Source of the DNA: Callorhinchus milii
Taxonomy: Eukaryota
Length of the DNA: 64,000 nucleotides
Direction of reading: 5' to 3'
Assembly (NCBI RefSeq): GCF_018977255.1
Contig: NW_024704751.1
Location: 496,001-560,000 of the forward strand
Both the position numbers and the translations under genes were made by a program. The notes under the pieces are model-generated. The model saw only the letters and a list, made by a program, of their open reading frames with translations, was not told the DNA's origin and ran no database searches. Of the stretch, positions 5,947 through 37,689 are shown piece by piece. Each line of letters begins with the position of its first letter. The stretch's first letter is position 1.

Positions 5947-11845
<5,899 letters not shown>

Positions 11846-12039
11846 GTGAGATCCCGAGTGAAGATTGCGATCTGTGATGTTTTGCTGTCAGTGTATAAGT
11901 CAGCCAAGGGGAGCAGTGGTGTTTGCCTGCGGAACTGCACTACCTGGCACTGACCTCCAACCAGATACTGCAATAGGGCGAGTGATGTAAATATCAGCTA
12001 CAGTAATAGATATGGTGTCAGCGTGGGTATGGGTGTGGC

Positions 12040-13320
12040 GGAGGGGGACGGGGGAGGGGGTGATTGCTGGGGGGGGGGGAGGGGATTGTGGGGGGAGGGG
12101 AGGGGTGATTGCTGGGGGAGGGGAGGGGAGGGGGTGATTGCTGGGGGAGGGAGGGGGGGGGGGGGTGATTGCTGGGGGGAGGGGAGGGAGGGTGATTGCT
12201 GGGGGGAGGGGGGGAGGGGAGGGGGAGGGGGGGGGGGGGGAGGGGGGTGATTGCTGGGGGGGGGGAGGAGGGGAGGGGGTGATTGCTGGGGGGAGGGGGG
12301 GGGTGATTGCTGGGGGGGGGGGGAGGGGAGGGGGGGTGATTGCTGGGGGGGGGGGGGGTGATTGCTGGGGGGAGGGGGAGGGAGGGGGTGATTGCTGGGG
12401 GGGGGGGGGAGGGGGGGGGGGGGGGGGGGATGCTGGGGGGGAGGGGAGGGGGTGATTGCTGGGGGAGGGAGGGGGGTGATTGCTGGGGGGAGGGGGAGGG
12501 GGGTGATTGCTGGGGGGGGGGGGGTGATTGCTGGGGAGGGGGAGGGGGGGAGGGGTGATTGCTGGGGGGGAGGGGGAGGGGAGGGGTGATTGCTGGGGGG
12601 GAGGGGAGGGGGTGATTGCTGGGGGGGGGGGGGGGGGGGTGATTGCTGGGGGGGAGGGGAGGGGGTGATTGCTGGGGGGGGAGGGGAGGGGGTGATTGCT
12701 GGGGGGGGGGGGAGGGGGGGGAGGGGGGGGGGGGGAGGGGTGATTGCTGGGGGGGGGAGGGGGAGGGGGGTGATTGCTGGGGGGAGGGGAGGGGGTGATT
12801 GCTGGGGGGAGGGGGAGGGGGAGGGGAGGGGGTGATTGCTGGGGGGGAGGGGGAGGGGAGGGGGTGATTGCTGGGGGGAGGGGAGGGTGATCTGCTGGGG
12901 GGAGGGGGAGGGGGGGGGGTGGTGGAGCGGGAGGGGAGGGGGTGATTGCTGGGGGGAGGGGGGGAGGGGGAGGGGGTGATTGCTGGGGGGGGGAGGGGAG
13001 GGGGGGGGGAGGGGGTGATTGAGGGGAGGGGGTGATTGCTGGGGGGAGGGAGGGAGGGGGTGATTGCTGGGGGGAGGGGGGTGATTGCTGGGGGGGAGGG
13101 GGGAGGGGAGGGGTGATTGCTGGGGGGAGGGGAGGGGGTGATTGCTGGGGGAGGGGAGGGGTGATTGCTGGGGGGAGGGGAGGGGAGGGAGGGGTGATTG
13201 CTGGGGGAGGGGAGGGGGGGGAGGGGGTGATTGCTGGGGGAGGGGAGGGGGGGGAGGGGGTGATTGCTGGGGGAGGGGAGGGGGAGGGGGGGGAGGGGGT
13301 GATTGCTGGGGGCGGTGATT
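12040..13320. repeat. G-rich tandem repeat with core gggtgattgctggggg and variable G/A spacers
   Basis: Dozens of gtgattgct cores separated by G-runs, with extreme strand asymmetry. Confidence 0.95.
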
Positions 13321-13630
13321 GACAGGTGGTGGCGCCGCTCCCCCGCGCACGCGCACAGCCTGTGTTTGGGTTGAATGTCACCTCGGATGTAAGATGGCGG
13401 CGCGAGTTGTTCAGCGCGCGGTGAGCGGCCTGAGGAGAGCCCGCGCCCCGGGCCCGGGCCCCGCCAACAGGTACGTGCGGTCCCCGCCTCATCCCCTCAG
13501 GTCGGCGGCGGGGCCCTGTTTGGGTGTCGGGGTGGGGGAGGTCACTATGTGCCGAGGGCCCTGGGACCCCCTCCCCACCCCCCGGGCCGCCTGTCAGGGC
13601 CTCGGGGTCTCCGGGGGGCGCCGCGCGGGG
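13321..13630 (+). promoter_or_regulatory. NIPSNAP2 CpG-island promoter with a YY1-type motif over the start codon
   Basis: CpG-rich. AAGATGGCGGC at 13391-13401 contains the ATG at 13394. Confidence 0.6.
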
Positions 13631-16600
13631 CAACTCCTTCAAGGTCACAATGTGGAGCAAAGTGGATTCTGATCATTTTCTTGTTATTATCATCAGCGTC
13701 ACGTCACTGTGGTTATGGCTGTCAGTAATGTGACATCTGGTCTGACACCTCACAGGATTCACTGTGAAGTGTAGTGACTGTGTTTTGTGAGTGAAGGCTG
13801 CAGCCAATTTTGACACCACTGCAAATATGTGTGACATGAATAAGTGGCTTTATCCAAGAGATCTGCCCCCAGGCCCCCTTCTCGTTTCCCGCCAGCACCC
13901 CGGGATCTTTAATGCCCGCACAAACAGGCACAGACAGGACCTCGGTTTGATGTCTCATCTGAAGGGCAACGTCTCTGACAGTGAAGCGCTCCCCCTCCCC
14001 AGTACTGAAATGTCAGCCTAGACTATGTGAGTTCCAAGTCCCGTCACGATGGTGGGTGAGGGTCCTGCCAACCGAGTGAAGCTGACACCTATATTTCACA
14101 GTGTAAGCCTGGCATCCTGACCACCGTCGCCTGGTCATTGGGTTTAAGATTTCACCTTGGCTCAAAGAACAGGCCAAATGAATACCTGTCTCACACCTGT
14201 ACCCACACAAGGGCAGCAGAAACAATGCAAGATGGGTGTAATAATAAAGAGAAGAGGATTTATCTTCTTAAAAATTGCAGTGAAACCCGGCCGAAGGCAC
14301 GGTCAAACGGGAAGGTCTTGAGCTGAGCCGTGAAGGAGGCAAGGGGTGGGGGGCGAAGTGGAGGGATCCAGGATGGCGTTCCAGAGGATTACCGTACTGA
14401 ATCACATGATTTCCCAGTTGAACAAGCAAGAGAATTTTTTTAATAAGAAAGATCAACACACCTTCCCATAATCACTGGATCCTGGGACAGCTGGTCAAAA
14501 TCCAATAAGGGATTTATTACCAGAAACTGTGACCATGTGTTGCAGAGAGGACTAATTTGGTTGTTCCTTTTCCGCAGCAGCTGTTTGGCCTTTTTACACC
14601 ACCTTTTAGTCCAGACCTTTCCACTAACTATCTTTATTCATTTGATCCAGCTCATGTTTCACCGTCAGCAACTATTTTTAGTACAGTGAACTTTCAGTGA
14701 TAATTAGAACAGTAAGGCACTGGTTTTTGGAAGACTAATTCCTGAACGGAATAATGCAACCCTACATGCAAATTCTATAGATTACAAGAGGTTAAAGATG
14801 CTCCACGCACTGAGTAATCGTCAAGCTTGGCCAAGTCAGTATTTGTAGTGAAAACTCAATCATCATCTGGGGAACATTTGGATGTTGATCTTCATTGGGA
14901 CAAGTTGTACACCTGATGTAGTTGACAATTTCATTTTTATTAACATTACAATATTTTAGAGGTGGTTAAAGGGGTATTGGGAATATTAGCACAGCTGTAG
15001 GATGTTTACTATTATGTAATGTCCTCATTTCTTAATTGCTGCCTCACTGATATCTTCCTGGTTATCATATACAACTTCTGTTGGTAAGTTGTGTAATTTT
15101 CTCTCCTTCCCACATACCCCATGTATCACCCCAGTTGATGGTAAGCAAGTGTCTGGCTCCTTGGCATTGACACAGATAAGCTGCTAGAATCAGTGCCGGA
15201 GTGGCCAACCGTGTTTGGACTTTCATTGTTGCCTCCTGCCTCCAGGAAAACAACTGAGTTCACCTGTTCAACAAGATCAAGAACATGCTATGTTGGGAAT
15301 TATGACATGAGTCCACTTACTGCCTTTCCTCAATTATATTTTCAATGTGAAAATGTTCAGAATGTCCAACGCTTGTTAAAAAAAATCTCACAGAAAGTCC
15401 TGAACACATTTCCGTTTGTTCATTATAACTTATGTGTGTTTCTGTTTCAGGGCATTATCTGCTACTTCGTACAACCAGAGGGAAGATAGCTGGTTCAAGT
15501 CACTGTTTGTCAGGAAAGTGGACCCACGAAAAGATGCTCACTCCACTTTGCTAGCTAAAAAGGAAACCAGCAATCTATACAAAATTCAGTGTAAGTTTAA
15601 TCTCCCATCATATTAAGAATAGAATACCCTAATGATACCATAGGTTGTGAAAAAGCAATTGACAAAATATAATTGATTTGAAATGAAAGTAAATGTTTCT
15701 AGAGGCAAATGCAACCGCTTAATAAGTATTTTTGTAAAAATGTACTCTTAAGTATAATTTGCAAATGTTTTAATTGTTTTCCAGTTCATAGTGTAAAGCC
15801 AGATTGTCTGGAAGCTTACAACCAACTCTGGTAAGCTTTTTATTAAAAATACTGACCATCTTCGTAATCCCTTCATGTCTGAAAACACTAATCTGTGGTT
15901 TTACTTGCAGTGCGTTAAGAAGACATAAAATACATCTATGATGTCCTTGCACTGATTGTGTTGTACAAAACAGCTCAGATAGCTTCTGTAGTGCTTATAA
16001 ATTAATTATTACAATGTATTATATATCAAATATTTCTCGGCAGCTTTACAAGGTGTTATCGGGTAGAAAGCAGAGAGTAGTGATAAACGGATCATTCTCG
16101 AATTGGCAGGATGTAACTAGTGGAGTGCCACAAGGATCAGTGCCTCGGCCTCAGCTATTTACCATTTACATCAATGATCTGGACGAGGACATTGAATGTA
16201 ATGTGTCTAAGTTCGCGGATGATACTAAACTCGGCAGCAGAGTGAGCTCTGAGGATGATGCAAAAAGATTGCAACGGGATATAGATAGGCTCGGGGAGTG
16301 GGCAAGTAGGTGGCAGATGGAATTCAATGTTAGCAAGTGTGAAATTATTCACCTCGGTAGCAAGAATAAAAGAACAGATTATTTTCTGGAAGGGGAGAAG
16401 TTAGATAGTGTTAGTATTCAAAGGGATTTGGGTGTCCTTGTACACCAGTCCCAAAAAGTTAGTTTGCAGGTGCAGCAGCAACTAAGAAGGCGAACGGCAG
16501 TTAGCGTTCATTGCAAAAGGTTTAGAATATAAGAGTAGGGAAGTCTCGCTGCAACTGTATAGGGCTTTGGTGAGACCGCACCGAGAGTATTGTGTGCAGT

Positions 16601-22600: not shown

Positions 22601-24384
22601 TTGCAGCTGCTTCTGTTAAGTGTGAGGAAGGTATTTGGCTGAAAATCATTGAGTTTTGTGAGCTGGTCTCCGCTCAATAAAGGTGTGTTACAGAATTTAC
22701 AGACACTGTAAGTGCTTCCAAGCATCAAATCGATGCAAAGATCTTTTCATTTATGCATAACTGATTATAATAGTTATTATGGAGTGACACAAATCCTGCA
22801 TGTTCAGAAATGATTTTAACTTTCAGGCAATCTCTACTTATTTTGTATTTAAATTTTCTGTTTTGGGGGGGAAATATTTTTCTACAAATTTGTTTTTTAA
22901 AATATTGTTTTCTAAAGGCCATGAAATAAATGCAGAAAGAATTTAAACATTTTCAGTGCATGACTGTTTCAGTGAGAGTTTGAAATGGGTAATGGGCATT
23001 TAAATACCTCATGACCCAATTCAACTCTTCTCTACTTCCCCCCCCCCCCCCCCCCCCCGCTACTCTCTCTTTGACAAATTGTCACAAATCCCGCATTGAT
23101 ACGACATTAATTTTTTAGTTGATTGTGCATCTGCCGTAATTGTCTCTGATCAGTGAATGCACCTTATTATGTTAGTGTTTTACTGTGTGTGTGTGTGGGG
23201 GCACTCGATGACCTGAGATGTGTCCCCAGGGCCCGAGCCATTCGCTATCGGCAGGATAACAATGAAGCCGTTGGCGGGTTTTTCTCCCAGATCGGAGAGT
23301 TGTACATGGTGCACCACCTGTGGGGTAAGAGGTCTTCATCAACCAGTTACACATAATACACAGTCATTACATTACACAGCAGTTATCTGGGAAGCCCTTT
23401 GATGCATTTTGATGTTATAGTTTGCCCACAAAATACATTCAGTGCACTTTCATGTATATTTTGTGAAGAGCTTTGAAACATCTCCACAACATGATAAGGC
23501 AATGCAAGGATTATTATCATTTGAGTTGGATAATGTCGTGAAGCTCTTCACAATAGCGGAGTTCGGCTCGGAGATGGGGGGTGGAGGGTGGTGGTCATAG
23601 GCATGGTCATAGAGGTAGATTTTAAATTGGGATAGATAGAAAAATGGATAGCACCTTGTATTATAGCAATATAATCACTACTATATTGCTCTGTGTCATA
23701 GGTTTAGGTCTTATGCTGTCATTTTTTAACTGACTATTTCAACTGTGCTGTGTCTTATCTGTTTTTAAGCTTATAAGGACTTGCAGACGAGAGATGAAAC
23801 AAGAAATGCTGCATGGCAGAAGGCTGGCTGGGATGAATGTGTATATTATACAGGTATTCGTTCCATCCTTTCTGCAATTCTTATAAAATTATTAATCATT
23901 TAGGCCTGCTAAACAAAGCTCAGTGCTATAAGGTGCCAGACAGGTCCAGTAGTAAACCACTTGCAGCAATGATTCTTTTATCAGAATTAAACATTCTGAT
24001 AAAATTGGCATAAACCAGTTTATTCCTTGGATTTGCAATGAAGCACATGCATCTTTTTTTTCTCTTTCTATCTACGCCTTCTTCTCTTACACTCTTTGTC
24101 TCCGATTGTCCTGGGGAAAATCATTTCAGATCAGGTCATTTACTCTTATGGTTGTTTGCGGGACCTTGCTATGCACAAAATTGCATCCGCGTTTGAATAA
24201 ACAGGCACTTGACAGTAATTACTCATGAAGCTCTTTAAGAGATTTTGATATGATAAGATGCTCTACGTAGTTTTTTTTACTTCTGAAGTAATTACTGACT
24301 TGACTGTCTCTCTACACAGTGCCACTCATCCAGCAAATGGACTCCAGGATTATGATCCCACGAAAAACGTCTCCACTTCAGTGA
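13394..24384 (+). CDS. NIPSNAP2: NipSnap homolog 2 (GBAS), 10 exons, about 281 aa
   Basis: Exons 13394-13470, 15451-15590, 15785-15830, 18042-18136, 19568-19638, 19820-19960, 22242-22273, 23230-23324, 23770-23853, 24320-24384. Shows [41 protein letters not shown] and the end [11 protein letters not shown]. Confidence 0.95.
16040..17140 (+). mobile_element. CR1-clade LINE, 5'-truncated, with RT C-terminus and 3' tail
   Basis: [44 protein letters not shown] and [10 protein letters not shown]. Tail gatcagccatgatcttattgaatggcgg...(ttcttatg)n. Confidence 0.92.
17800..18020 (-). mobile_element. CR1 LINE 3' fragment
   Basis: [19 protein letters not shown] plus a CR1-type 3' UTR. Confidence 0.7.
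18745..19120 (+). mobile_element. CR1 LINE 3' fragment
   Basis: [20 protein letters not shown] and the same tail as the 16-kb copy. Confidence 0.8.
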
Positions 24385-25758
24385 GCTCAATACCAAGACG
24401 GCACTTTTCAAACCAAGGCGCTGACTTGTCTTTTGCCCCAAGACTCAACAATAAGTAGCAGGTCACTGACGTGAAGTTGTATTTGACATGATTGAAATAG
24501 GTATATATCTTAAGTCCTTTGTGGACACTACAGAAACTAAATCTTCAAATTACTCAGCTACACTTTTCCTGGATCCTTTGTAGTGAGGTATCAATATTGA
24601 GCTGGTTGGCAATCCTGAGTGTGTCCTTTCACTGTTTGTCTCCCCCTCCATTCAGATGGCCTGACCCACGAGAGGTGCCACTGTGGTGGGGCATTTCCGA
24701 TCTTTGGCTTAAAGGCAATAAAAGAAAGGGACAGATTCAGAATTGTCACAGGGTCACTGCAGGTTCCCAGCATTCTGACACCAGGACACTCCCCGTTTTA
24801 ACAGTGAATGTGTTGTTTGCTCTCGGAATTTTAAAAGTGTGAGGTTCAGTCAGGGAACGACTTTTTAAATAAAATCATTTAGTTGGAAGGTTTTACTCCT
24901 GAAAGTTCAATGCTCTCCATTCTTTGACTTCAGTGTCAAATCCTGTCCAAGTATACAGGTTTCTCTTGTGATTTGCTGTTGCTCTATACTGCTGCAGTGA
25001 TGCATGGTCAATCACTGTGTAAAATGTAAGCTTTACAAACACTGTAATTTTTTTATCCAGTTTGGTCCTGTGCTTATTTTTAAAATGGCACCATTATGTA
25101 TTGTTTCTAGAGTTTACAAGAATTCAGCAAATCCTAAACACCTAAGAAAATATGTTTCTATATCATTGCGTGGCAGTCAGGTTAAACTAGCCACTAAGCC
25201 TGAAATAAACACGATTTGCAACATTTGTCTGTGGGGTGCCTTACCTGTGGGGTGCCTTATCTGTGCAATTGAATGCTGACAGGTCCTTTAACAAACCTGT
25301 TCATGAGCTAAACCAGGATAAAAACTGCCAGAGACTGGCAAATCCATCTAAAGTCATCCTTTAAGTGATTGAATCTATGAACCGTGTCCAACGTGTAAAA
25401 TGCTGACTTGCCAGCAGTGCCATACTGGCCGGTTTGAAATATTCAACTTTACCTAAGAACATTTAAAATACACTGTCACAAATACAGCAATAATTTTATT
25501 TTAAAATAAAATACAGGATCATAAACTGAAATGGCCAGAGGTCAGCACAGCTTTAACAACACACACCAATAGAAATCCATTCCTCAAATGGTATTACCTC
25601 TGCAGAACAGCTAGAACATGAAGCAACATAGAATTAATGTTCCACAAATGTGAGCTGCAACAGTTTGCTGATTCACCTAAAAGTGCAGCTAAAATCTGCT
25701 TAGAGCAGGCATGAACTATGGACGTAAAGAGCGATGCGTTTTATTATTAGGATTACTC

Positions 25759-26260
25759 TTATTTATTGCGTTTGAACATATCATACAGGTAGTCACTGTA
25801 CTGGGGCAGTAAAGTAGCCAGCTTCCCGTGGAAGACTCTAATGAGCCTGGTAGAGTTGCCCACGAAAATGCCCGTGGTTTCAGTGGTAAACACAGGAATC
25901 CCGTACCACTCCACCATGTGCCTGATGATTCTCCCCCGGAGAAAATTGTGGTCACCACGTCCCAGCCATTGACCGGTACAATAGGGTCTTCAAACTGCAT
26001 GTTTGCTGTGTAATGTTTCATTCTGTCCAGCGATGGCTTACACTGGTAAAGTCCCAGCACTGCATCAATCAGTGCCTGCCTCGTGTTTGTGATCTCCTGC
26101 TTTGTACCACTCGGTAAGTCCTGATTCCACCGAGGTTGAGGCAGAGGTTTGGGCTTTGTGGTGATGAGATAGTAGCCCGAGCAGCTCTGGATGCCAGAGT
26201 ACCACACAAAGGGATTGATTAGGGTAATCTTCAGCATTGTGTCGCTCACTTTCTGTAAAC
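25759..26260 (-). pseudogene. Disrupted NTF2/SnoaL-like-fold gene (internal deletion plus frameshift)
   Basis: Frame 1 reads LIDAVLGLYQCKPSLDRMKHYTANMQFEDPIVPVNGWDVVTTIF. A shifted frame from about 25935 reads GRIIRHMVEWYGIPVFTTETTGIFVGNSTRLIRVFHGKLATLLPQYSDYLYDMFKRNK* (stop 25761-25759). A splice acceptor (cttcccctcaacttcag) precedes 26260. Confidence 0.6.
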
Positions 26261-29200
26261 CTGAAGTTGAGGGGAAGTTAAAGCACTTAAAATTAGTTTG
26301 CAGTTTAGATGCAGAGTTGAACCAAAGTCCTATCTGGCTGTTCAGGCGGCATTAAAGATGCCAAATATGATGCTACTTAGAAAAGAGTTTCTCCTGGTGC
26401 AGATTGGCTGTCACATTTGCCTTCACAAATCCCTTTACCCAGTGGACAGCAATCGTCTGACATTAATAGGGGCTGCCTCAAGTGCAAAGATGATTTCATT
26501 TAGCGCTTTTTCAAATTTCTCTACCAGTTTATGTGAGATGTTGTCATGCACAGCAATTTTTGCCACTGTGCCTTCCTGGTGTGTTCACAGTAACTTGCAA
26601 TTTGAAATTGGAGCCCAGGTTCCCAGAGGTGATGGGACAGTGCATCTTTCTGCTTCTCTCAGCGTTTCACCCACATAATATACAGTCAATTCACTTTACA
26701 GTATATTCTATGAAGCTCTTTGAGACGTCTCGAAGACATGATAAGGCACTGTGTCAAATGCAAGGATTATTATTATCAGGTCACAAGTTAGAAAATGAAA
26801 TCCACTCAACCCCCGAGCTGAGGGTAACATCAGCCCAGAGTGAGGAAATTGCAAGTTATACACCAGTAATTCCAGTGAGAATGGTGCAAGTTTGCAAGAA
26901 ATGTTTAAAAACAAAGTAAACTTTCAAATAAAAAAACAACTTAAAATGGTCTGTGGTTTGCAAGTAGGGCAGTTAGGACAAGTAGTATGCGGGAAAGGTC
27001 ATATGCCTTCACTTATTCATGATAAAAATCACAAGACGTCCTTGTAATTACTGCACCGTCTTCAATTAGTGGCTGAAAAAGAATGACCCAGCTGTTTCAA
27101 GTATTGTTTCCAGGGTGGAAACCTACTGCTTCTGCAGGCTGTTCATTAAACACCGAATGATCATTGCAGTGTGAGATGAAGCAATGTTCTAAAGACAGAC
27201 TCCCCAAAGAGGGAAATGGTGGAGAGGGAATCTTTGCCAGCTTGGGAGACTGAGAAACAACTTAAAGGAAAAAGAAATTCTACTTTTCTATCCCATATTT
27301 CTTAGCTCAAATATGGACACAATTACACAACATAACAATCTGCTGGGCTTTTCAAAATGCCATCAGAATCTAAAAGCACCGATACCTATAATTTAACATT
27401 AGGCTATAAATAACTAGTCACAATAATTTTGTCACTCAATCCATAGCTGTTTGTGGGACACCGTTATGTCAATTGGCCGCCGTATTTCGCCCTCAAAAAT
27501 ATAGTCAATTCACTTTACAGTACAATCTGTGAAGCGCTTTGAGACGTCTCGATGACGTGATAAGGTTCTATATCAAATGTAAGGATTACTATTACTAACG
27601 TTCTGTTTCAAATTAGACCAATGCTTCTACTCAACCACATGAGAAACTTGATAATTAACTTAACCTAACTCAATTCCCAAATAAAATAATTAACTACTGT
27701 AATACAAATGTTTTAATTACTTTTCAGTTAAAATAATATTGAATGAAATGGTGCCTCTAAGTTAAACATATTCTCAAAACCTTGCACATCAGTTAAGATA
27801 AATAACACTCCAGTAATTACAACTTTCACTGCTGTCCTCAGTCAGCAAATATCAACATGTGTCAAACGCTGAAAAAAAATACAATTTTTAGGAAAGAAAC
27901 AAACAAAACCTGTGTCAACCAAACCCAGAAACTGACCGGCTGAACTCAGAAGTGGTCCGACGGAATCCTAAACGATGAAGCTTTGGTTTAAAGTTGAAAC
28001 CTCCGCAATTTAATGAATAACTGGAGATTTTATAAAACTTGCCTGATATTGGAACCTGCTCAAGTCACTCAGTGTTTTCCTGCAACTTGGAACATCTGAC
28101 CCCACAACCCTTTGCCGCATAGCATTGCAATGACATTGAAATTTGAAAAAAGCGATTTCTTTTCCTAATCCTGCAACTATTTCACATGCTCGGTACTGAG
28201 AACCACAATGTAGGCCCACACACGTTACACAAGGTGATCTCATCATTTCCTCTGGAAATTGCATTTTCGATGTTAAATTACTGGAGATACGTGTGGTTCT
28301 GTCCCGGGGTGTTGTCCAATTATTCAGGCGCGTTGTGTTAAAATGAAGTATCTTAAATCTTTATAACATGGGGAACATTCCAAGCATAACCCGTAAAGCT
28401 TATTCCGATCAGGTCCCATGTTACATGGTGTTGCGTGCCAAAGATTTAAAACGAGGAGATGCATCTTCTAATGACTGATCCCTTCACCCTTTGTCGCTTG
28501 CACGGGCACCACCAGCCTGCACCATGTCCCTCGCCCTACCCACCCCACCATTGGCATTCGGGCCTTCAGCCTCTGTCCCCACCCTTGGGAACTCCATTTC
28601 ATCGTCCCTTCGCTTCACTCGCTTCGGTCCAAATTCCTAATTGCCCAGTGCCTTGAGACATCCTCCCGATGTGAAAGGTAATATACAAATGTAATTTGTT
28701 GTTATCTCAGCAATACATCTAGATTCTGTTCATTTTCTTATTTTCATCACTTTAATTCTGTCGCTTGTCACATTTCATCCTGTCCTTGTGCACTTTAGTC
28801 TGATTTTTCCAACTCCAATCCATTGCATCTTGTGGTGTAAAGCTTAGTTTGTAAATCTCTGGCCTCTGGGTCAGAATGTTGTGGTTTTGTGCCTTGTATA
28901 GGTCTATCTCACGGTGCTGATACAAAAAGACGGAGATAGAACTGTAGAAAATGACAGCACAGAAGAAACCCTGGTGTCCTGGTTAACATTCCTCTCAAAT
29001 AAATGCATCAATAAAATCAGATTAATTGATCATTTATCTCATTGTTGCATGCAACAATTTTGTGCCGTAATATTTAGTAATTTATATGGTCTGGAAGTTT
29101 CCTGTGCTTCAATGTGGAAACTTAGTAACAAAAAAGCAATTTAGATTAGATAATACGGGGGATATATACGTGGTTCTAGAATCAATTTTGTTTGCCCTGA

Positions 29201-29771
29201 ATTTCTTGATTTGACAAAAAAAGGCAAAATTTTTACTCAGCAGAAAATGTTCCCCGTTGCATGTGTAAGATGCAACATTTATACAATAAATCTGCTGAGA
29301 AAATGTTATATTTGATTAAAATTGTATTGCTGTAACTTCCATCAACCCAGACTGGAATGGTCAGTTTTATGTTCTTGGTTTCCTTATCCACACAGATGCA
29401 GCGCACGATTGTACTTTGTTTCCACTTCCATCGCTAACCTGCCAAATTCCTCCAATTGTTCATTTGTATTTGATAAAATTGTTCACATCAGAGAATCCAA
29501 CAAACTGTTTTATTTCGAATGTAATCTTGATGTTCTGCACTGTACAAGTAGCAGTTTGACAATTTGTGTCACAAAGGCTTTGAAAAATATGCAGTACTTT
29601 TCTCAGATGACGCCCCCCCCTCCCCCCAACACACACACACACACACACATCTGGACTGCCTTCTTTTGCCTCTGGAACATTGCCATGCCCTCCTCTAAGC
29701 GTAGATGTTTCCAACTACCCTGATTTCACTCTCCAGGAGTTCCAACCGATCCAGACCTCAACAGCCTGAGT

Positions 29772-30080
29772 AATAATAATAATAATCCTTACATTTGATG
29801 TAGCATTTTTCGTATCTTCTAGACGTCTCAAAGCGCTTCCGAGAATATGCTGTAAAGTGAATTGACTGCATATTTGGGGGCAAAACGCGGCAGCTAATTG
29901 CGCACAGCAGCGTCCCTCAAACAGTCATGGATGGAGTGACCTATTATTGTTTTTTTTCCGAGGGATTATTATTAGGTGTGTGGAGTAAGGAAACTTGCCC
30001 AACGTTTTTCCCTGCCGGAAATCAAACCCAGGTCTCTTGCTTGCGAGGAGAGCGCTCTAACCACTGAGCTACAGGACTCC
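29772..30080 (-). mobile_element. tRNA-derived SINE, short variant
   Basis: Reverse complement of the ggagtcctgtagctcagtggttagag head and (tta)n tail. Confidence 0.85.
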
Positions 30081-30989
30081 AGTTGAGTTCTCGCCTCAAT
30101 AGGCTCTGCATAATCACTACCCTTTCCTCAGCGAACTCCACTGGCTCCCAAAGTATTTCAAAGAATTAAGATATTGTCTTCAAATCCCTCCATGGTCTCG
30201 CTCAGCCTGCCTATGCAGTCTTCTCTAGTCCATGACCTCTTCTCTAGTCCATGACCTCTACTCTTCCAGCTCTGGTTGGGCAGTTACAGTGTGTATGTAC
30301 GTTATTAATACTGATTCCATGTTTATTATTAGATTAGACACAGGCCCTGATGTAAAGAATAGCATTTAAAATCAGACTCCAAACCAGGATTGTCAGTTGA
30401 GTTAATAAAATGTTTTCAAAATTGGAATCTACAATCAGCTGCATTTAGATGCAGCAGTTTTATTTTTTGCTAAAAGCACAACAGATCACAATTATAAATA
30501 CAGTTGACAGTGTGTACATAAGTTTCCAGGTAGCAGACTTTCTCAATAATCTTGGAGGTAAAAATAAAAATAAAGATTAATGATAGTAATTAAGATATTC
30601 TCAAGCCTACATGTTAGGTACCACCATATTAACCAACAGATTTGTACCAGGATTCTCCACAGGATAGGACATATCTTCATGTCCTTGTCTTATTGATGCA
30701 AACGCCAGGTTGGTCAACGGCCGGGATTATTGAGGACCTGGTTGCTTTTGCCAATCATATTTCCTTGAAACCAACTGTGTATCAGGAAGACTAGTGTAAC
30801 TCCTCCAACACACAAAACAACTCATTTTAAACTGACCTCCAGAAGATGAAGGGCTGAGCAGACCCCACAGTGTTTGAACCCAGAACTTCCTGAGCCCAAG
30901 TCTAATGCTCCAACAATTGGGCCAAACTGAGCTGTTTATGTTGGGGTGTGGGAAAATTGTACCTGGCTAGTAATAAAGAGAAATATAGG

Positions 30990-31195
30990 GACATAGGAAC
31001 AGGAGGAGGCCATTCAGCCCTCAAGCCTGTTCTCCATTCTATTAGATCATGGCTAATCTGTACCTCAAATCCAATTAGTTGCATTTTCCCTGTATGCTTT
31101 GATACCCTGACCTAACAAAAATCTATCCAACTCAGTCTTGGAAATTTGAATGGATCCAGCATCTACAGCCTTTGGGGGGAGAGAGTTCCAGATTT
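30990..31195 (-). mobile_element. CR1 3' tail fragment
   Basis: ggaacaggaggaggccattcagccc...gatcatggct is the reverse complement of the CR1 tail. Confidence 0.7.
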
Positions 31196-31443
31196 CAAAG
31201 TAACATTGGGAACCCTGTGCATGAATGGAATCACACAGTCCATTAGCCCGAGGCTTTTGGGGAAGAGATCAACCATGGAACTGGGAGGTTTTAAAAATAA
31301 CAGCATGGGGCAAAGTGGCTATTTCTGCATACAGTACATTTTATGTGAGGTCATAAAGAAACTAGTCTATATCTTTTCAAGTTTAAAATTTTAAAATTAA
31401 AATGATAATGAACAGAAAAACTAGAGAACCGATGTGTTTCTCT

Positions 31444-34301
31444 TCACTTTGCGTAAAGTGTGAAGTCCTGTCCTTGACGTGAAACCTTTGTTTCCAGCTC
31501 TTCAAGTATGTCTTTAAAGCTGCTGATGAACCAAGGGGCATTGTCCTTCACTTGTTGTCGGATAACATTCCCACCAAATCCAATGAATGCATCCTAAGAG
31601 ACCAGAAAAACAAGATACTCCGTAAACCAAGTCAGATACTAGGCTAAAATTCCTTGCAATTCAGTGTGGCAGTTTTTATATTGAGGATTTGCATTATAAT
31701 ATATCATCACTACACTGAGTGAGAAGAGGAATTTGACCCCAAGATATTTGCCCATGAGTTTATAATCAGCCTAATAGGGAAGCAGAGTGAGCTTCACTTA
31801 AGCTGAAATTTACATAAATAACGTCTTTATTATTTAGCACGGTGTCTGACAATGAAGAAATGTCCAAGATCCATACGTACAGCAGGAGGACATGCTTCCA
31901 GGTCTGTCGCTCCATCTCCAATCATAACCACCTTCTTAAAGCCTTTCTGTTCCTTTAGCAGACTTATGATCCTGCCTTTCCCACCAGATTCAGCTGTCGG
32001 CTGAGTTTCATCAAACCCAGCGTACTCTCCTGCAATAAAGTCACGTGACATTCAAACCCAAGAGCAACTCCAACGCAGCAGTATGTTTATCTAGTGAATA
32101 ACTGAGCCACTCAGAACAACAGTCACAAATTTGATCCTCAGTCTCTGCTGAATTAGCTAATAATAATATCAAATGCAAGGATTATTATTATCATAATCCT
32201 TGCATTTGATATAGCAATTTATCACGTCTTCAAGACGTCTCAAAGCTCTTCACAAAATATACTGTACAGTATATATTTGACTGTGTATTTTCTGGTTATA
32301 CGTGGCAGCCAATTGGACACGCAGTGTCCCACAAACAGTCGTGGATAAAGTGACCAAATTATTATTATTATTTTTTGAAGGGATTAATACCCCCAGAAAA
32401 GCAATCTGCCAATCGATTAAGAACCGGATTCCTCTTTACTGCTAGGGAAACAGAGGCGTGTGGAGTAAGGAAACTTGCCCAACGTTTTGCTCTGCCCGGA
32501 AATCAAACCCAGTAGTCTTGCTTGCAAGGCGAGTGCTCTAATCACTAGTTACAGGACTCCAATCAGTCAATCAGGGCAGCGAATAATAAAATATACAACG
32601 CAATCCTTGCACTTGATATATAATCTTTCAGGTGGGGAGGACATATCAAAGCACTTCACAAGATTTACTGTAAAGTGTAGCATTAGTAGCAGTGCTGCAT
32701 GCCACTGCCATTCCCTGACTGGAGAGGAGAGATTGTAGAAACATACAACAATTTACATATTCTTTCTTGAGTTTTATGAGACAAAAGCTTTTTGCCCAAG
32801 CAATCGCTAACTCCCCTCGTCTGAATCCTTACCATTAAAGTAAAACTTGAGTCTGTTTGCGTATACGTTAGTCAGAGGAACATTGATTCTTGTTGCCACG
32901 TGCTCCACGATGCACTGAAATCCCCCAGATATTAAGAAAACTTGTACTCCGCGCTTTTGAAGCCGATCTACCAGATCCCTGGTTAAAAACATAAGTTTAA
33001 CAATAGTTCAATGCTTTGCAGGATCAATATTTAAACGTTAGCAGATTAACAAACCTGAAACTTTAAAGTAAAAATTCTTTCCATCACTAATCTTTTCCTT
33101 TCTTTTTAGTTTCTGCGTCTTATTCTGTGCTTTGGTTTTCCTCCCTACGATAGATTATATTCATTATTACATTTTCTGCTCCCTTAATAGCTCAGTGAAG
33201 AAATAATTATGTTGTTTGCTACAGAGACAGACACACCAAGCAGCTTTCCTCCCTAGCTTCAGGCCAAGATAGCTGACATCAGCTGAGTAGAATGGGCCAT
33301 TGCAATTGCCTCAGTGTCCTCTTGCTAGGGAGAAGCAAAAAAAAAATGTCCTGCTTTGAATTGCTCTGTAACAATCCCTGGTGATGAGTGCAAACATTCT
33401 GGGGATGGACAGTTGGGGCTAAAATGAAATGGCCACTTAATGGTATTGGCAACAGAAAGGCCAATAGGACTGCGGATTACAGGCCCACTGTCCTTGGATC
33501 TGCCTCCAAATATATTTATAGATTCAGTCAGGGATGAAAGCTGTACCGAACCATCAACATCGCAAGAAGAAACCAGAGGGAAAGTTGGAAGAGAAAATGT
33601 ATTTTTTTAACAAATGGCACAATTTTTTTTATGATTAGGAATTATCTTACTTTATGCCCTCAGTTAATTGAGGAGGGTGATCTGTTATTAGTTTATTCAC
33701 TTGCTCTCGTGAAGGCCGTATAACTGCGAGACGTTCCGTTAACGCCTTCCTAAATGGGATTGCGCCTCCCATTGCATTCCGAGTCCTGAAAGAAAGAAAA
33801 ATGTTCAGTTGGTGAGACAAAACAATCTGATTCAAAATACTGAGGCACTACTGCTTTCCTTTAAAAGTAAAGGCACAACATATACAGCAACGTTGTCACA
33901 CATCAAACAGCTATCATACTACAAAACACACCTGACACAAAATTCATCTTTGGATTCAGAATTTGGATGCCTATTTATCTATATTCGGTTGTACTATGTC
34001 ACTACACTTTGCCTACAGAGATTCGAATATCTTGTATGATATGATTAAAGTTTTGTGAGTAAATGTACTAATAGAGCTCAAGTACCTTTGTGATTTCAGA
34101 CCAAGCTCCACAATGGAATCCCCTTTAATATCACACAACAAATAGACATCCAAACACTTACATTTCTGCCACAGCATCCCCAACTCCACAGAATTTCGCC
34201 AGTTCATCAATCCCTTCCTCTTTGATCACTGTGCTGTCTACATCGAAACATACTGCATCAGCACTGCGAAAGGTTTCTTTTGTTTCAGCAAGCATGGCCA
34301 T
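31444..34301 (-). CDS. PSPH: Phosphoserine phosphatase (HAD family), 5 coding exons, about 239 aa
   Basis: Exons 34301-34162, 33785-33651, 32978-32833, 32029-31881, 31593-31444. Catalytic motif CFDVDSTVI, plus LISGGF, GGKG, MIGDGATD and DAFIGFGGNVIR. Confidence 0.96.
32183..32560 (-). mobile_element. tRNA-derived SINE, long variant
   Basis: Same head, body and tail, reverse complemented. Confidence 0.8.
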
Positions 34302-37537: not shown

Positions 37538-37689
37538 NNNNNNNNNNNNNNNNNNNNNNNNNNNNNNNNNNNNNNNNNNNNNNNNNNNNNNNNNNNNNNN
37601 NNNNNNNNNNNNNNNNNNNNNNNNNNNNNNNNNNNNNNNNNNNNNNNNNNNNNNNNNNNNNNNNNNNNNNNNNNNNNNNNNNNNNNNNN
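37538..37689. other. Assembly gap (152 N)
   Basis: Run of N. Confidence 1.

What the first reader, a model, noticed from the sequence alone, without database searches (positions are those of the whole stretch)
25759..26260. Broken NTF2/SnoaL-like gene resembling a plant/fungal-type family, between NIPSNAP2 and PSPH
Seen: a minus-strand ORF with LIDAVLGLYQCKPS..RMKHYTANMQFEDPIV..NG, which turns to apparent nonsense after VVTTIF. A second frame starting near 25935 gives GRIIRHMVEWYGIP...RLIRVFHGKL. A good splice acceptor precedes the exon. Knowledge from recall: vl.LY...p.....Y..da.FeDP...a.G at the N-terminus and GkI.rH.d.W.g.p...Rr..G at the C-terminus are hallmarks of small NTF2/SnoaL-like proteins best known from fungi and plants. 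I know of no such gene in the human 7p11.2 block. Inference: the central beta-strands (roughly 50 codons) were deleted with a frameshift. This would be either a pseudogenised ancient or horizontally acquired gene, or an intact gene with a collapsed assembly.
Basis: partly seen in the sequence, partly recalled or inferred. Interest (0 to 1): 0.8.

Follow-up and report, generated by a model that had tools for sequence, protein, structure and literature searches.

The report
Deletion allele of an unnamed chordate gene
The broken gene is real: this assembly carries a copy missing about 166 bases from its middle, while RNA from another animal of the same species holds a full-length version, and its only detectable relatives are an unnamed amphioxus protein and one unnamed protein from a public assembly.

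Summary
Observation confirmed. On the minus strand, an ATG at 26237 opens a frame that stays homologous up to ...VVTTIF(S). A second frame runs from about 25935 (GRIIRHMVEWYG...) to the stop at 25759-25761.

An exhaustive phmmer search of 1.84 billion representatives with the N-half found two full-length relatives. These are Branchiostoma floridae LOC118430496 (216 aa) and an unnamed Logan protein (203 aa). A profile of those two alone hits the N-half at positions 4-103 (E 9e-18) and the C-half at 170-211 (E 0.004; 0 of 5000 shuffles reach it). Positions 104-169 are missing.

Laid contigs settle the break. In RNA run X2 one contig carries 164 extra letters exactly at 25936/25937, a net +166 nt. 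That restores the frame and gives about 214 codons. DNA-like run X4 crosses the junction without them, on a different haplotype. X1's contigs break exactly there. So the window holds a real, apparently segregating deletion allele, neither a species-wide pseudogene nor a mere assembly collapse.

NTF2/SnoaL kinship is only hinted: SnoaL_2 scores E 0.029 on the amphioxus protein, plus Atlas leads. Both AlphaFold models were too poor to use. The amphioxus relative argues against a plant, fungal or horizontal origin. Which strand is transcribed is unresolved.

The parts
25938..26237 (-). N-terminal 100 codons of the gene (ATG at 26235-26237, through ...GWDVVTTIFS). They comprise a moderately hydrophobic aromatic N-terminus, a basic and proline-rich linker, then the conserved block RQALIDAVLGLYQCKPS...QFEDPI..G.
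   Evidence: phmmer hits P0002 (E 2.9e-5) and P0003 (E 8.5e-5) over query 5-98. Profile hit HMM 4-103, E 9.2e-18. Kyte-Doolittle 19-residue maximum 0.8-1.2 at the N-terminus, in the window's N-half and in both homologues.
25936..25937 (.). Deletion junction, with a two-letter overlap. In run X2, 164 letters absent from the window lie here, a net +166 nt.
   Evidence: table 8. X2 record 9 is laid as record 1-765 on 26700-25936 and record 930-1264 on 25937-25600. X1 records 1 and 2 end or start exactly here. X4 record 16 crosses it without extra letters.
25762..25935 (-). C-terminal 58 codons (GRIIRHMVEWYG...FHGKL...KRNK). In the window they lie in a frame shifted relative to the N-half.
   Evidence: Profile hit HMM 170-211, E 0.0041. 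0 of 5000 shuffles reach it.
25759..25761 (-). Stop codon of the C-half frame.
25716..25937 (-). Out-of-frame read-through of the N-half frame in the deletion allele (GGESSGTWWSG...SLRP, then a stop). This is the nonsense tail that the window's allele would encode.
   Evidence: No Pfam match and no useful Atlas match (protein 2, which I ran on this frame by mistake).
25740..25767 (-). Two minus-strand AATAAA signals, at 25762-25767 (overlapping the stop) and 25740-25745.
   Evidence: pattern scan only; use not shown.
25780..25782 (-). In-frame 3-letter indel polymorphism in the C-terminal tail. As I read the tatgatatg context, it removes one Asp codon. Present in X2 and X4, absent in X1 and the window.
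   Evidence: table 4. Codon reading.
25848..25848 (-). SNP T>C on the plus strand, in X1 and X4. It is the first base of an AGG codon on the minus strand, so Arg to Gly in ...NSTRLIR...
   Evidence: table 3. Codon reading.
26238..26700 (-). Upstream stretch covered without a break by the same RNA contigs (candidate 5' UTR if the minus strand is the one transcribed). It ends in a high-copy SINE fragment at about 26680-26800.
   Evidence: tables 2 and 8..
24317..24384 (+). Context: last coding exon of the convergent NIPSNAP2-like gene ([21 protein letters not shown], then a stop). Its 3' UTR runs towards the feature.
   Evidence: translation; gene name by recall. X1 record 1 (1622 nt starting at 25937) would end at about 24316, which is my arithmetic.
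31444..31593 (-). Context: last coding exon of PSPH, about 5.2 kb upstream of the feature on the same strand.
   Evidence: sequence reading; C-terminal motif recognised by recall. Contigs of X1, X2 and X9 are laid only up to 31593 while their records run on, whereas X4 runs to the end of the stretch (table 8). PSPH identity.

Best explanation
The window carries a loss-of-function allele of a small gene whose coding sequence lies in a single exon, on the minus strand between the 3' ends of NIPSNAP2 and PSPH.

- The complete gene would encode about 214 residues: a moderately hydrophobic N-terminal segment, a basic linker and an alpha+beta domain of about 160 residues.
- In the window's allele, about 166 bp are gone at a two-letter microhomology (25936/25937). 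They would encode the middle of that domain, 56 codons counting the junction codon. The loss shifts the frame, so translation from the ATG would give 100 native residues plus a nonsense tail.
- The deletion is real DNA, also read in a DNA-like run on another haplotype. But it is not fixed: an RNA contig from another animal of the same species holds a version with the right extra length at exactly that point.
- The gene belongs to an unnamed, very sparsely sampled family. The only detectable relatives are an uncharacterised amphioxus protein and one unnamed protein from a public assembly. The amphioxus relative makes vertical descent the simplest reading, though two relatives cannot prove it.

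Shown: the two frames, their collinear homology to one family, the size and place of the gap, the extra letters in X2, and the deletion form in X4.

Inferred:
- The 164 unseen letters encode the missing middle without a stop.
- The domain is a divergent NTF2-like cone, which would lose its beta-sheet core in the deletion allele. I put this at about even odds.
- The minus strand is transcribed.
For: -: with the N-half, only 3 of 1.84 billion representatives reach E 0.001. P0002 (216 aa) and P0003 (203 aa) match over nearly the whole query.
- P0002 is Branchiostoma floridae LOC118430496.
- N-half matches profile positions 4-103 and C-half positions 170-211. Positions 104-169 are absent.
- 0 of 5000 shuffles reach the C-half score.
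-, X2: record 9 has 164 unlaid letters between 25936 and 25937. The two pieces overlap by 2 letters, so the net gain is +166 nt. Then 299 + 166 = 465 = 155 x 3, which joins the two frames. The result is 214 codons, against 203 and 216 in the homologues, with 56 codons in the gap against 53 in P0003.
-, X4: record 16 bridges the junction without extra letters. It differs from the window at 25848 and at 25780, so it is another haplotype.
-, X1: its contigs end and begin at exactly 25936/25937, as at a bubble between two forms.
-, kind of run: X1, X2 and X9 contigs stop at the PSPH exon boundary 31593 and run on unlike the stretch, so they behave as RNA. X4 has even depth in 30 of 30 bins, so it behaves as DNA.
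Against: - I never saw the 164 letters, so an open frame and homology of the insert are inferred from place and length only. A length that restores the frame has a 1 in 3 chance by itself.
- All four runs are contigs. They cannot show strand, allele share or heterozygosity. X4 may come from the animal that was assembled.
- The RNA contig of X2 runs on about 1.4 kb below 25600, into the NIPSNAP2 3' UTR and last exon. So the coverage may be NIPSNAP2's long 3' UTR or read-through on the plus strand, not a transcript of this gene. In X1, depth falls with distance from NIPSNAP2: 102.6, then 18.1, 9 and 4.65.
- Only 4 of the 12 runs that hold the stretch were laid.
- Two polymorphisms change the protein within the 58 C-half codons, which does not look like strong constraint.
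- C-half homology fails pairwise BLASTP.
- Family kinship to NTF2 is below every curated threshold.
Confidence: 0.78

Rival explanations
1. Assembly artefact only: the animal's DNA is intact and the assembler dropped 166 bp.
For: X2's contig has the extra letters. Earlier notes of this scan describe other frame-breaking deletions in this assembly for which intact transcripts exist (unchecked AI notes).
Against: X4 record 16 (2135 nt, depth 10.5) bridges 25936/25937 with hundreds of letters on both sides and no insertion. It differs from the window at two nearby places, so words spanning the junction exist in reads that are not simply the window's own consensus.
Confidence: 0.06
2. Old, species-wide pseudogene; the 164 letters in X2 are an unrelated insertion such as a mobile element at that spot.
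For: The letters were not seen. The window is rich in SINE copies.
Against: - The insertion sits within one or two codons of where homology to the family breaks on both sides.
- Its net length restores the frame and gives 56 codons where the homologues have 53 to about 65.
- The overlap is GG on the minus strand (read), not the TA target duplication that I recall for mariner-type elements.
- Both halves are still free of stops over 100 and 58 codons, at about 30-35% identity to an amphioxus protein. That would not be expected after long decay.
Confidence: 0.07
3. Two loci: the short form is this locus in all animals, and the long form comes from a near-identical duplicate missing from the assembly.
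For: The long form was seen only in RNA runs and the short form only in DNA (window, X4). X1 seems to hold both.
Against: X2's contig matches the window with 0 other letters over 765 + 335 letters of mostly non-coding flank and runs on for 1.4 kb more. X4's DNA contig is not broken at the junction, as it would be if both forms were in one genome. X2 shows the long form only.
Confidence: 0.07
4. Horizontally acquired fungal, plant or bacterial NTF2/SnoaL gene.
For: The Atlas's nearest clusters by features are Ascomycota hypothetical proteins (0.94, 191 of 256 features) and bacterial NTF2-clan families (0.82-0.85). The coding sequence lies in a single exon.
Against: No fungal, plant or bacterial protein reaches E 0.001 in the exhaustive search. 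The named relative is a cephalochordate nuclear gene on a 21.8-Mb contig. The Atlas's own recognition value (2210) is under its 2300 line, and it gives no alignment.
Confidence: 0.04

Closest known systems
Branchiostoma floridae uncharacterized protein LOC118430496 (XP_035697297.1 / UniRef100_C3YVU8; P0002, 216 aa)
   Same: It is collinear over the whole length. It shares the N-terminal aromatic-hydrophobic segment (..Y.G....Y.L), the block R..L..A.L.LYQ.KPS, F.DP....G, then E.WYG and .FHG. near the C-terminus. Identity is 30-35%. Its length of 216 compares with about 214 for the long form.
   Different: It has no known function and no Pfam domain on record. Its middle is about 65 residues against 56.
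P0003, an unnamed 203-aa protein from a Logan assembly (7196-nt contig)
   Same: Same architecture. QFEDPI is identical. 34% identity to the N-half.
   Different: Its organism is unknown and was not looked for. It is about equally far from the window and from amphioxus (26-30% to P0002).
NTF2-like clan: Pfam SnoaL_2 (PF12680), DUF2358 (PF10184)
   Same: SnoaL_2 aligns to P0002 residues 58-133 from profile position 1, which is where the conserved LYQ helix starts. The Atlas lists DUF2358, SnoaL_2, DUF1348 and NTF2_SigF clusters for the N-half. G.I..H..W) is present.
   Different: Every score is below threshold (E 0.029, 15.4 bits against 27). There is no hit for the window halves or for P0003, none in PDB, and no usable model. 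The domain of about 160 residues is longer than the roughly 100-130 I recall as typical.

Membership tests
Unnamed chordate family (amphioxus LOC118430496 / P0003) | Significant sequence similarity over the N-terminal half. | tested here: met
   E 2.9e-5 and 8.5e-5 in a library of 1.84 billion. E 9.2e-18 against the two-sequence profile within the window.
Unnamed chordate family (amphioxus LOC118430496 / P0003) | Collinear similarity of the C-terminal part (E.WYG ... FHG). | tested here: met
   HMM 170-211, E 0.0041, second of 2119 segments; 0 of 5000 shuffles. But BLASTP pairwise is not significant.
Unnamed chordate family (amphioxus LOC118430496 / P0003) | Central part (profile 104-169, with F.FELPSV) present. 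| tested here: not met
   It is absent from the window. Extra letters of matching length are present in X2's contig, but they were not readable.
NTF2-like superfamily (SnoaL_2 / DUF2358) | Match to a curated profile at its gathering score. | tested here: not met
   no family for either half. SnoaL_2 15.4 bits against a cut-off of 27 on P0002 only; nothing for P0003; no relevant NCBIfam match.
NTF2-like superfamily (SnoaL_2 / DUF2358) | Alpha+beta cone fold (three helices packed on a curved sheet). | tested here: inconclusive
   AlphaFold2 on 4- and 5-row alignments gave mean pLDDT 45.2 and 37.6. These are too poor for a fold search, so none was run.
NTF2-like superfamily (SnoaL_2 / DUF2358) | Sequence relatives among solved structures. 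| tested here: not met
   no NTF2-like chain at E up to 10.
Processed or decayed pseudogene | Disabled in all copies and all animals of the species. | tested here: not met
   X2's contig has a frame-restoring +166 nt at the break.

The most novel reading that the evidence does not exclude
This would be an undescribed protein family shared by a cephalochordate and a vertebrate, a divergent NTF2-like domain behind an N-terminal anchor. Among annotated vertebrates it would survive as a working gene with a single-exon coding sequence only in this lineage. Here it would be caught in the act of being lost, with a 166-bp null allele segregating beside an intact, expressed one. That makes a natural knockout available for a gene of unknown function.
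Probability: 0.4. Interest if true: 0.6.

Novelty: new member of a known kind. Interest (0 to 1): 0.45.

Why it matters
- Annotation: a reference genome that happens to carry a null allele hides a gene from annotation. No protein of this family from any vertebrate was found among 1.84 billion representatives. Annotation from this assembly would give at best a broken model here.
- Gene content: if the long form is a working gene, it adds a member to the small set of genes shared with cephalochordates that most vertebrates appear to have lost. It also supplies natural null animals for asking what the gene does.
- Assembly quality: this is one more frame-breaking deletion in this assembly for which a longer version exists in public reads. 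Earlier notes of the scan mention similar cases (unchecked).
- Limits: this is ordinary population genetics in an uncharacterised gene. No new mechanism is implied.

Tried and rejected
- Pfam on both halves gave nothing. NCBIfam gave only a chance acylphosphatase match at E 0.15.
- Word-indexed protein searches:
  - (N-half region of the 177-aa ORF) found nothing.
  - (alignment A2, E up to 0.01 and then 10) found only the two proteins already in the alignment, among 2103 candidates.
- P0001 (2166 aa, E 1.5e-8) is rejected as a relative. It is a 31-35-residue match at 35-39% identity, repeated in each of many tandem units, so the E-value adds up dependent repeats.
- PDB sequence searches were blank.
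- Both AlphaFold jobs failed to give a usable model, so no fold search was run and the fold stays untested.
- The search for related loci could not use the alignment. A single-protein scan would find only near-identical DNA in collections that hold no vertebrates, so I did not run one.
- Papers:
  - (BRAFLDRAFT_121783, LOC118430496, C3YVU8): 0 papers.
  - (SnoaL + Branchiostoma): 0 papers.
  - (NIPSNAP2 + PSPH + elephant shark): 0 papers.
  - I saw only these empty listings. No paper was read, and supplements were not needed.
- Ideas rejected:
  - A tiny intron between the halves: only about 25 nt are available.
  - An alternative 3' exon of PSPH: no joint from PSPH to the feature was listed, and depth between them is about 0-3 in RNA run X2.
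  - A tandem duplication in X2: the pieces overlap by 2 letters only.
- My own error: (second protein), 11 and 20 used 25762-25937, which is the N-half frame, not the C-half frame.
  - Those results therefore describe the nonsense tail.
  - Pfam was repeated in the right frame.

Full report
WHAT IS IN THE SEQUENCE

On the minus strand, a stop-free segment runs from 26351 to 25719. Its first ATG is at 26237, in the context gacACAATGC. It reads MLKITLINPFVWYSGIQSCSGYYLITTKPKPLPQPRWNQDLPSGTKQEITNTRQALIDAVLGLYQCKPSLDRMKHYTANMQFEDPIVPVNGWDVVTTIFS, and then a tail with no similarity to anything.

A second frame opens at about 25938. It reads (R)GRIIRHMVEWYGIPVFTTETTGIFVGNSTRLIRVFHGKLATLLPQYSDYLYDMFKRNK up to the stop at 25759-25761, which overlaps an AATAAA.

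CONTEXT

- The window has one N run, at 37538-37689, 45% G+C and a CpG ratio of 0.48.
- PSPH lies on the minus strand. Exon 34161-34370 matches human PSPH chains at E 2.5e-15. Its last coding exon is at 31444-31593 (read).
- A NIPSNAP-like gene lies on the plus strand. I recognised it by reading translations against recall. Its last exon ends at about 24384. Pfam and PDB gave nothing for the one exon I tried.
- So the feature sits between two convergent 3' ends. It is about 5.2 kb downstream of PSPH on the same strand, and about 1.4 kb beyond the NIPSNAP2 stop on the opposite strand.
- Earlier notes of this scan call the genome an elephant shark or chimaera. I did not test that.

WHAT THE TWO HALVES ARE

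Pfam finds nothing in either half. A word-indexed search found nothing either.

The exhaustive phmmer search of 1.84 billion cluster representatives with the 99-residue N-half gave 3 proteins at E up to 0.001.

- P0002: 216 aa, E 2.9e-5, matched over query 5-92. It is Branchiostoma floridae LOC118430496, with a near-identical copy in a Branchiostoma hybrid.
- P0003: 203 aa, E 8.5e-5, matched over query 7-98. It comes from an unnamed Logan contig.
- P0001: a 2166-aa repeat protein. Its score is a 31-35-residue match repeated in each of many tandem units. I reject it as a relative.

In a MAFFT alignment, the N-half lines up with the first 100 columns of the two homologues. The C-half lines up with their last 60 columns or so.

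For a test that does not use window sequence, I built a profile from P0002 and P0003 alone. I scored it against all 2119 six-frame stop-to-stop segments of 20 aa or more in the window.

| Rank | Segment | Profile positions | E-value |
|---|---|---|---|
| 1 | N-half | 4-103 | 9.2e-18 |
| 2 | C-half | 170-211 | 0.0041 |
| 3 | +7060-7293 (unrelated) | 97-127 | 0.0092 |

The third hit shows that E-values from a two-sequence profile are somewhat generous. But 0 of 5000 shuffles of the C-half segment reach its 13.6 bits; the maximum was 8.0. The C-half is also adjacent to the N-half, on the same strand and in the right order. Against this, BLASTP of the C-half on either homologue alone is not significant.

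Profile positions 104-169 have no counterpart in the window. By my count from the alignment, that stretch is 53 residues in P0003 and about 65 in P0002.

THE BREAK ITSELF

The look-up of sequencing runs found 12 runs of one coded organism, from 4 studies, that hold the stretch. I laid 4 of the 12 (X1, X2, X4, X9) on 25600-31599. All four are Logan contigs.

Which runs behave as RNA and which as DNA:

- Contigs of X1, X2 and X9 are laid only as far as 31593, the PSPH last-exon boundary, while their records run on. Depth in X2 is about 390-400 on the PSPH exon and 3' UTR, 0-3 over most of the stretch in between, and about 220 on the feature. These runs behave as RNA.
- X4 has depth in 30 of 30 bins, about 5-15 in the single-copy bins, and runs through the exon boundary. 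It behaves as DNA.

What each run shows at the junction:

- **X2.** Record 9 (2658 nt) is laid as record 1-765 on 26700-25936 and record 930-1264 on 25937-25600. So 164 letters of the contig lie between two window positions that are neighbours.
  - The two pieces share 25936-25937, so the net gain is 166 nt.
  - The C-half frame is offset from the ATG frame by 299 nt. 299 + 166 = 465 = 155 x 3, so the insertion joins the two frames.
  - The coding sequence becomes 476 + 166 = 642 nt, or 214 codons. In X2 itself it is 213, because that contig lacks three letters at 25780. The homologues have 203 and 216.
  - The gap becomes 56 codons, against 53 to about 65 in the homologues.
- **X4.** Record 16 (2135 nt, depth 10.5) crosses 25600-26450 with no insertion. 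It differs from the window at 25848 (T>C) and by the three letters left out at 25780.
- **X1.** Record 1 starts at exactly 25937 and record 2 ends at exactly 25936. This is the picture expected at a bubble between two forms.
- **X9.** It covers only 26082-26269.

I could not see the 164 letters.

READING

The window's copy is a deletion allele.

- The deletion is real in reads, since X4 shows it on another haplotype.
- It is not fixed, since X2 holds the long form.
- It occurred at a two-letter microhomology, GG on the minus strand.
- The four sequences (window, X1, X2, X4) differ from each other at three nearby sites: the SNP, the 3-letter indel and the junction. This points to ordinary segregating variation.
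- The window's allele would encode 100 native residues and then a nonsense tail up to 25716.

WHAT IS NOT SHOWN: TRANSCRIPTION OF THE MINUS STRAND

- X2's contig runs on for 1394 letters below 25600. That reaches the NIPSNAP2 last exon, and perhaps spliced upstream exons.
- X1's record 1 would end at about 24316, next to the start of that exon (my arithmetic).
- So the RNA coverage of the feature is continuous with NIPSNAP2's 3' UTR. Contigs carry no strand information.
- In X1, contig depth falls with distance from NIPSNAP2: 102.6, then 18.1, 9 and 4.65. This would fit plus-strand read-through as well as a weak minus-strand gene.
- The acceptor-like site at about 26260 is not used in any contig seen.

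THE FAMILY AND THE FOLD

- Pfam SnoaL_2 touches the amphioxus protein at residues 58-133, from profile position 1. But it scores E 0.029, 15.4 bits against a cut-off of 27. It does not touch P0003.
- For the N-half, the Atlas gives as nearest clusters Ascomycota hypothetical proteins (0.94, 191 of 256 features). NTF2-clan families follow at 0.82-0.85: SnoaL_2, DUF2358, DUF1348 and NTF2_SigF.
- The Atlas's recognition value is 2210, under its own 2300 line. It also warns that a third of shuffled proteins reach the same clan agreement.
- PDB sequence searches are blank.
- AlphaFold2 on the shallow alignments gave mean pLDDT 45.2 and 37.6. I ran no fold search.
- The N-terminal segment is only moderately hydrophobic, with a Kyte-Doolittle 19-residue maximum of 0.8-1.2. 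From memory, the usual transmembrane line is about 1.6.
- I therefore hold 'divergent NTF2-like domain behind an N-terminal anchor' at about even odds. On that reading the deleted part is the start of the beta-sheet, so the short allele could not fold.

ORIGIN

No fungal, plant or bacterial protein reached E 0.001. The named relative is a nuclear amphioxus gene on a 21.8-Mb contig. The simplest reading is vertical descent from an early chordate gene, though two relatives are too few to prove it.

No vertebrate protein was found among the representatives. So the gene is either lost or unannotated elsewhere in vertebrates.

ERRORS OF MINE

(second protein), 11 and 20 used a reference one base off, so they read the N-half frame. 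Those results describe the nonsense tail, not the C-half. Pfam was redone in the right frame. The Atlas could not be redone.

VERDICT

The deletion-with-frameshift reading is confirmed and sharpened into a segregating allele. The NTF2 label is plausible but unproven. The plant, fungal or horizontal-transfer idea is not supported.

Noticed in passing
window 26680-26800, 27470-27600, 28600-28800, 29760-30100, 30800-31200: High-copy SINE-like repeats. The one at 29760-30100 looks tRNA-derived by eye, with a tRNA-like head, a ...cagtcaattcactttacag...gagacgtct... body and an (att)n tail. Summed contig depth there reaches 10^4-10^6 in all four runs, and most of the listed joints and loose ends come from these copies.
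   Followed up: no
window 24206-26700: In RNA run X2 a single contig links the feature to the NIPSNAP2 last exon and 3' UTR. So either the convergent transcripts overlap or NIPSNAP2's 3' UTR extends about 2.3 kb across the feature in antisense. Plus-strand AATAAA signals lie at 24717, 24868, 25204 and 25505, then an ATTAAA at 26351.
   Followed up: partly
window 16014-16529 (+): Reverse-transcriptase fragment (Pfam RVT_1, E 4.1e-13) inside the NIPSNAP2-like gene, presumably an intronic LINE remnant.
   Followed up: no
window 11900-13660: Long G-rich (minus strand: proline-rich) low-complexity repeat that gives 450-590-aa artefactual ORFs.
   Followed up: no
window 25780-25782 and 25848: Two protein-changing polymorphisms within the 58 C-half codons among four sequences: an in-frame loss of one codon and an Arg/Gly change. 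No differences were listed in the N-half or in the non-coding flanks at 25600-26700.
   Followed up: partly
window 7060-7293 (+): A segment in the NF2-like gene region scored E 0.0092 against the two-sequence family profile (positions 97-127). I take it for chance, and as a warning about the calibration of that profile.
   Followed up: no
P0001 (2166 aa): A large protein with many tandem units of about 140 residues, each holding ..NTGR.VLPALLPVYQSLPAV.., which mimics the family's LYQ block. It inflates phmmer significance through repetition.
   Followed up: partly
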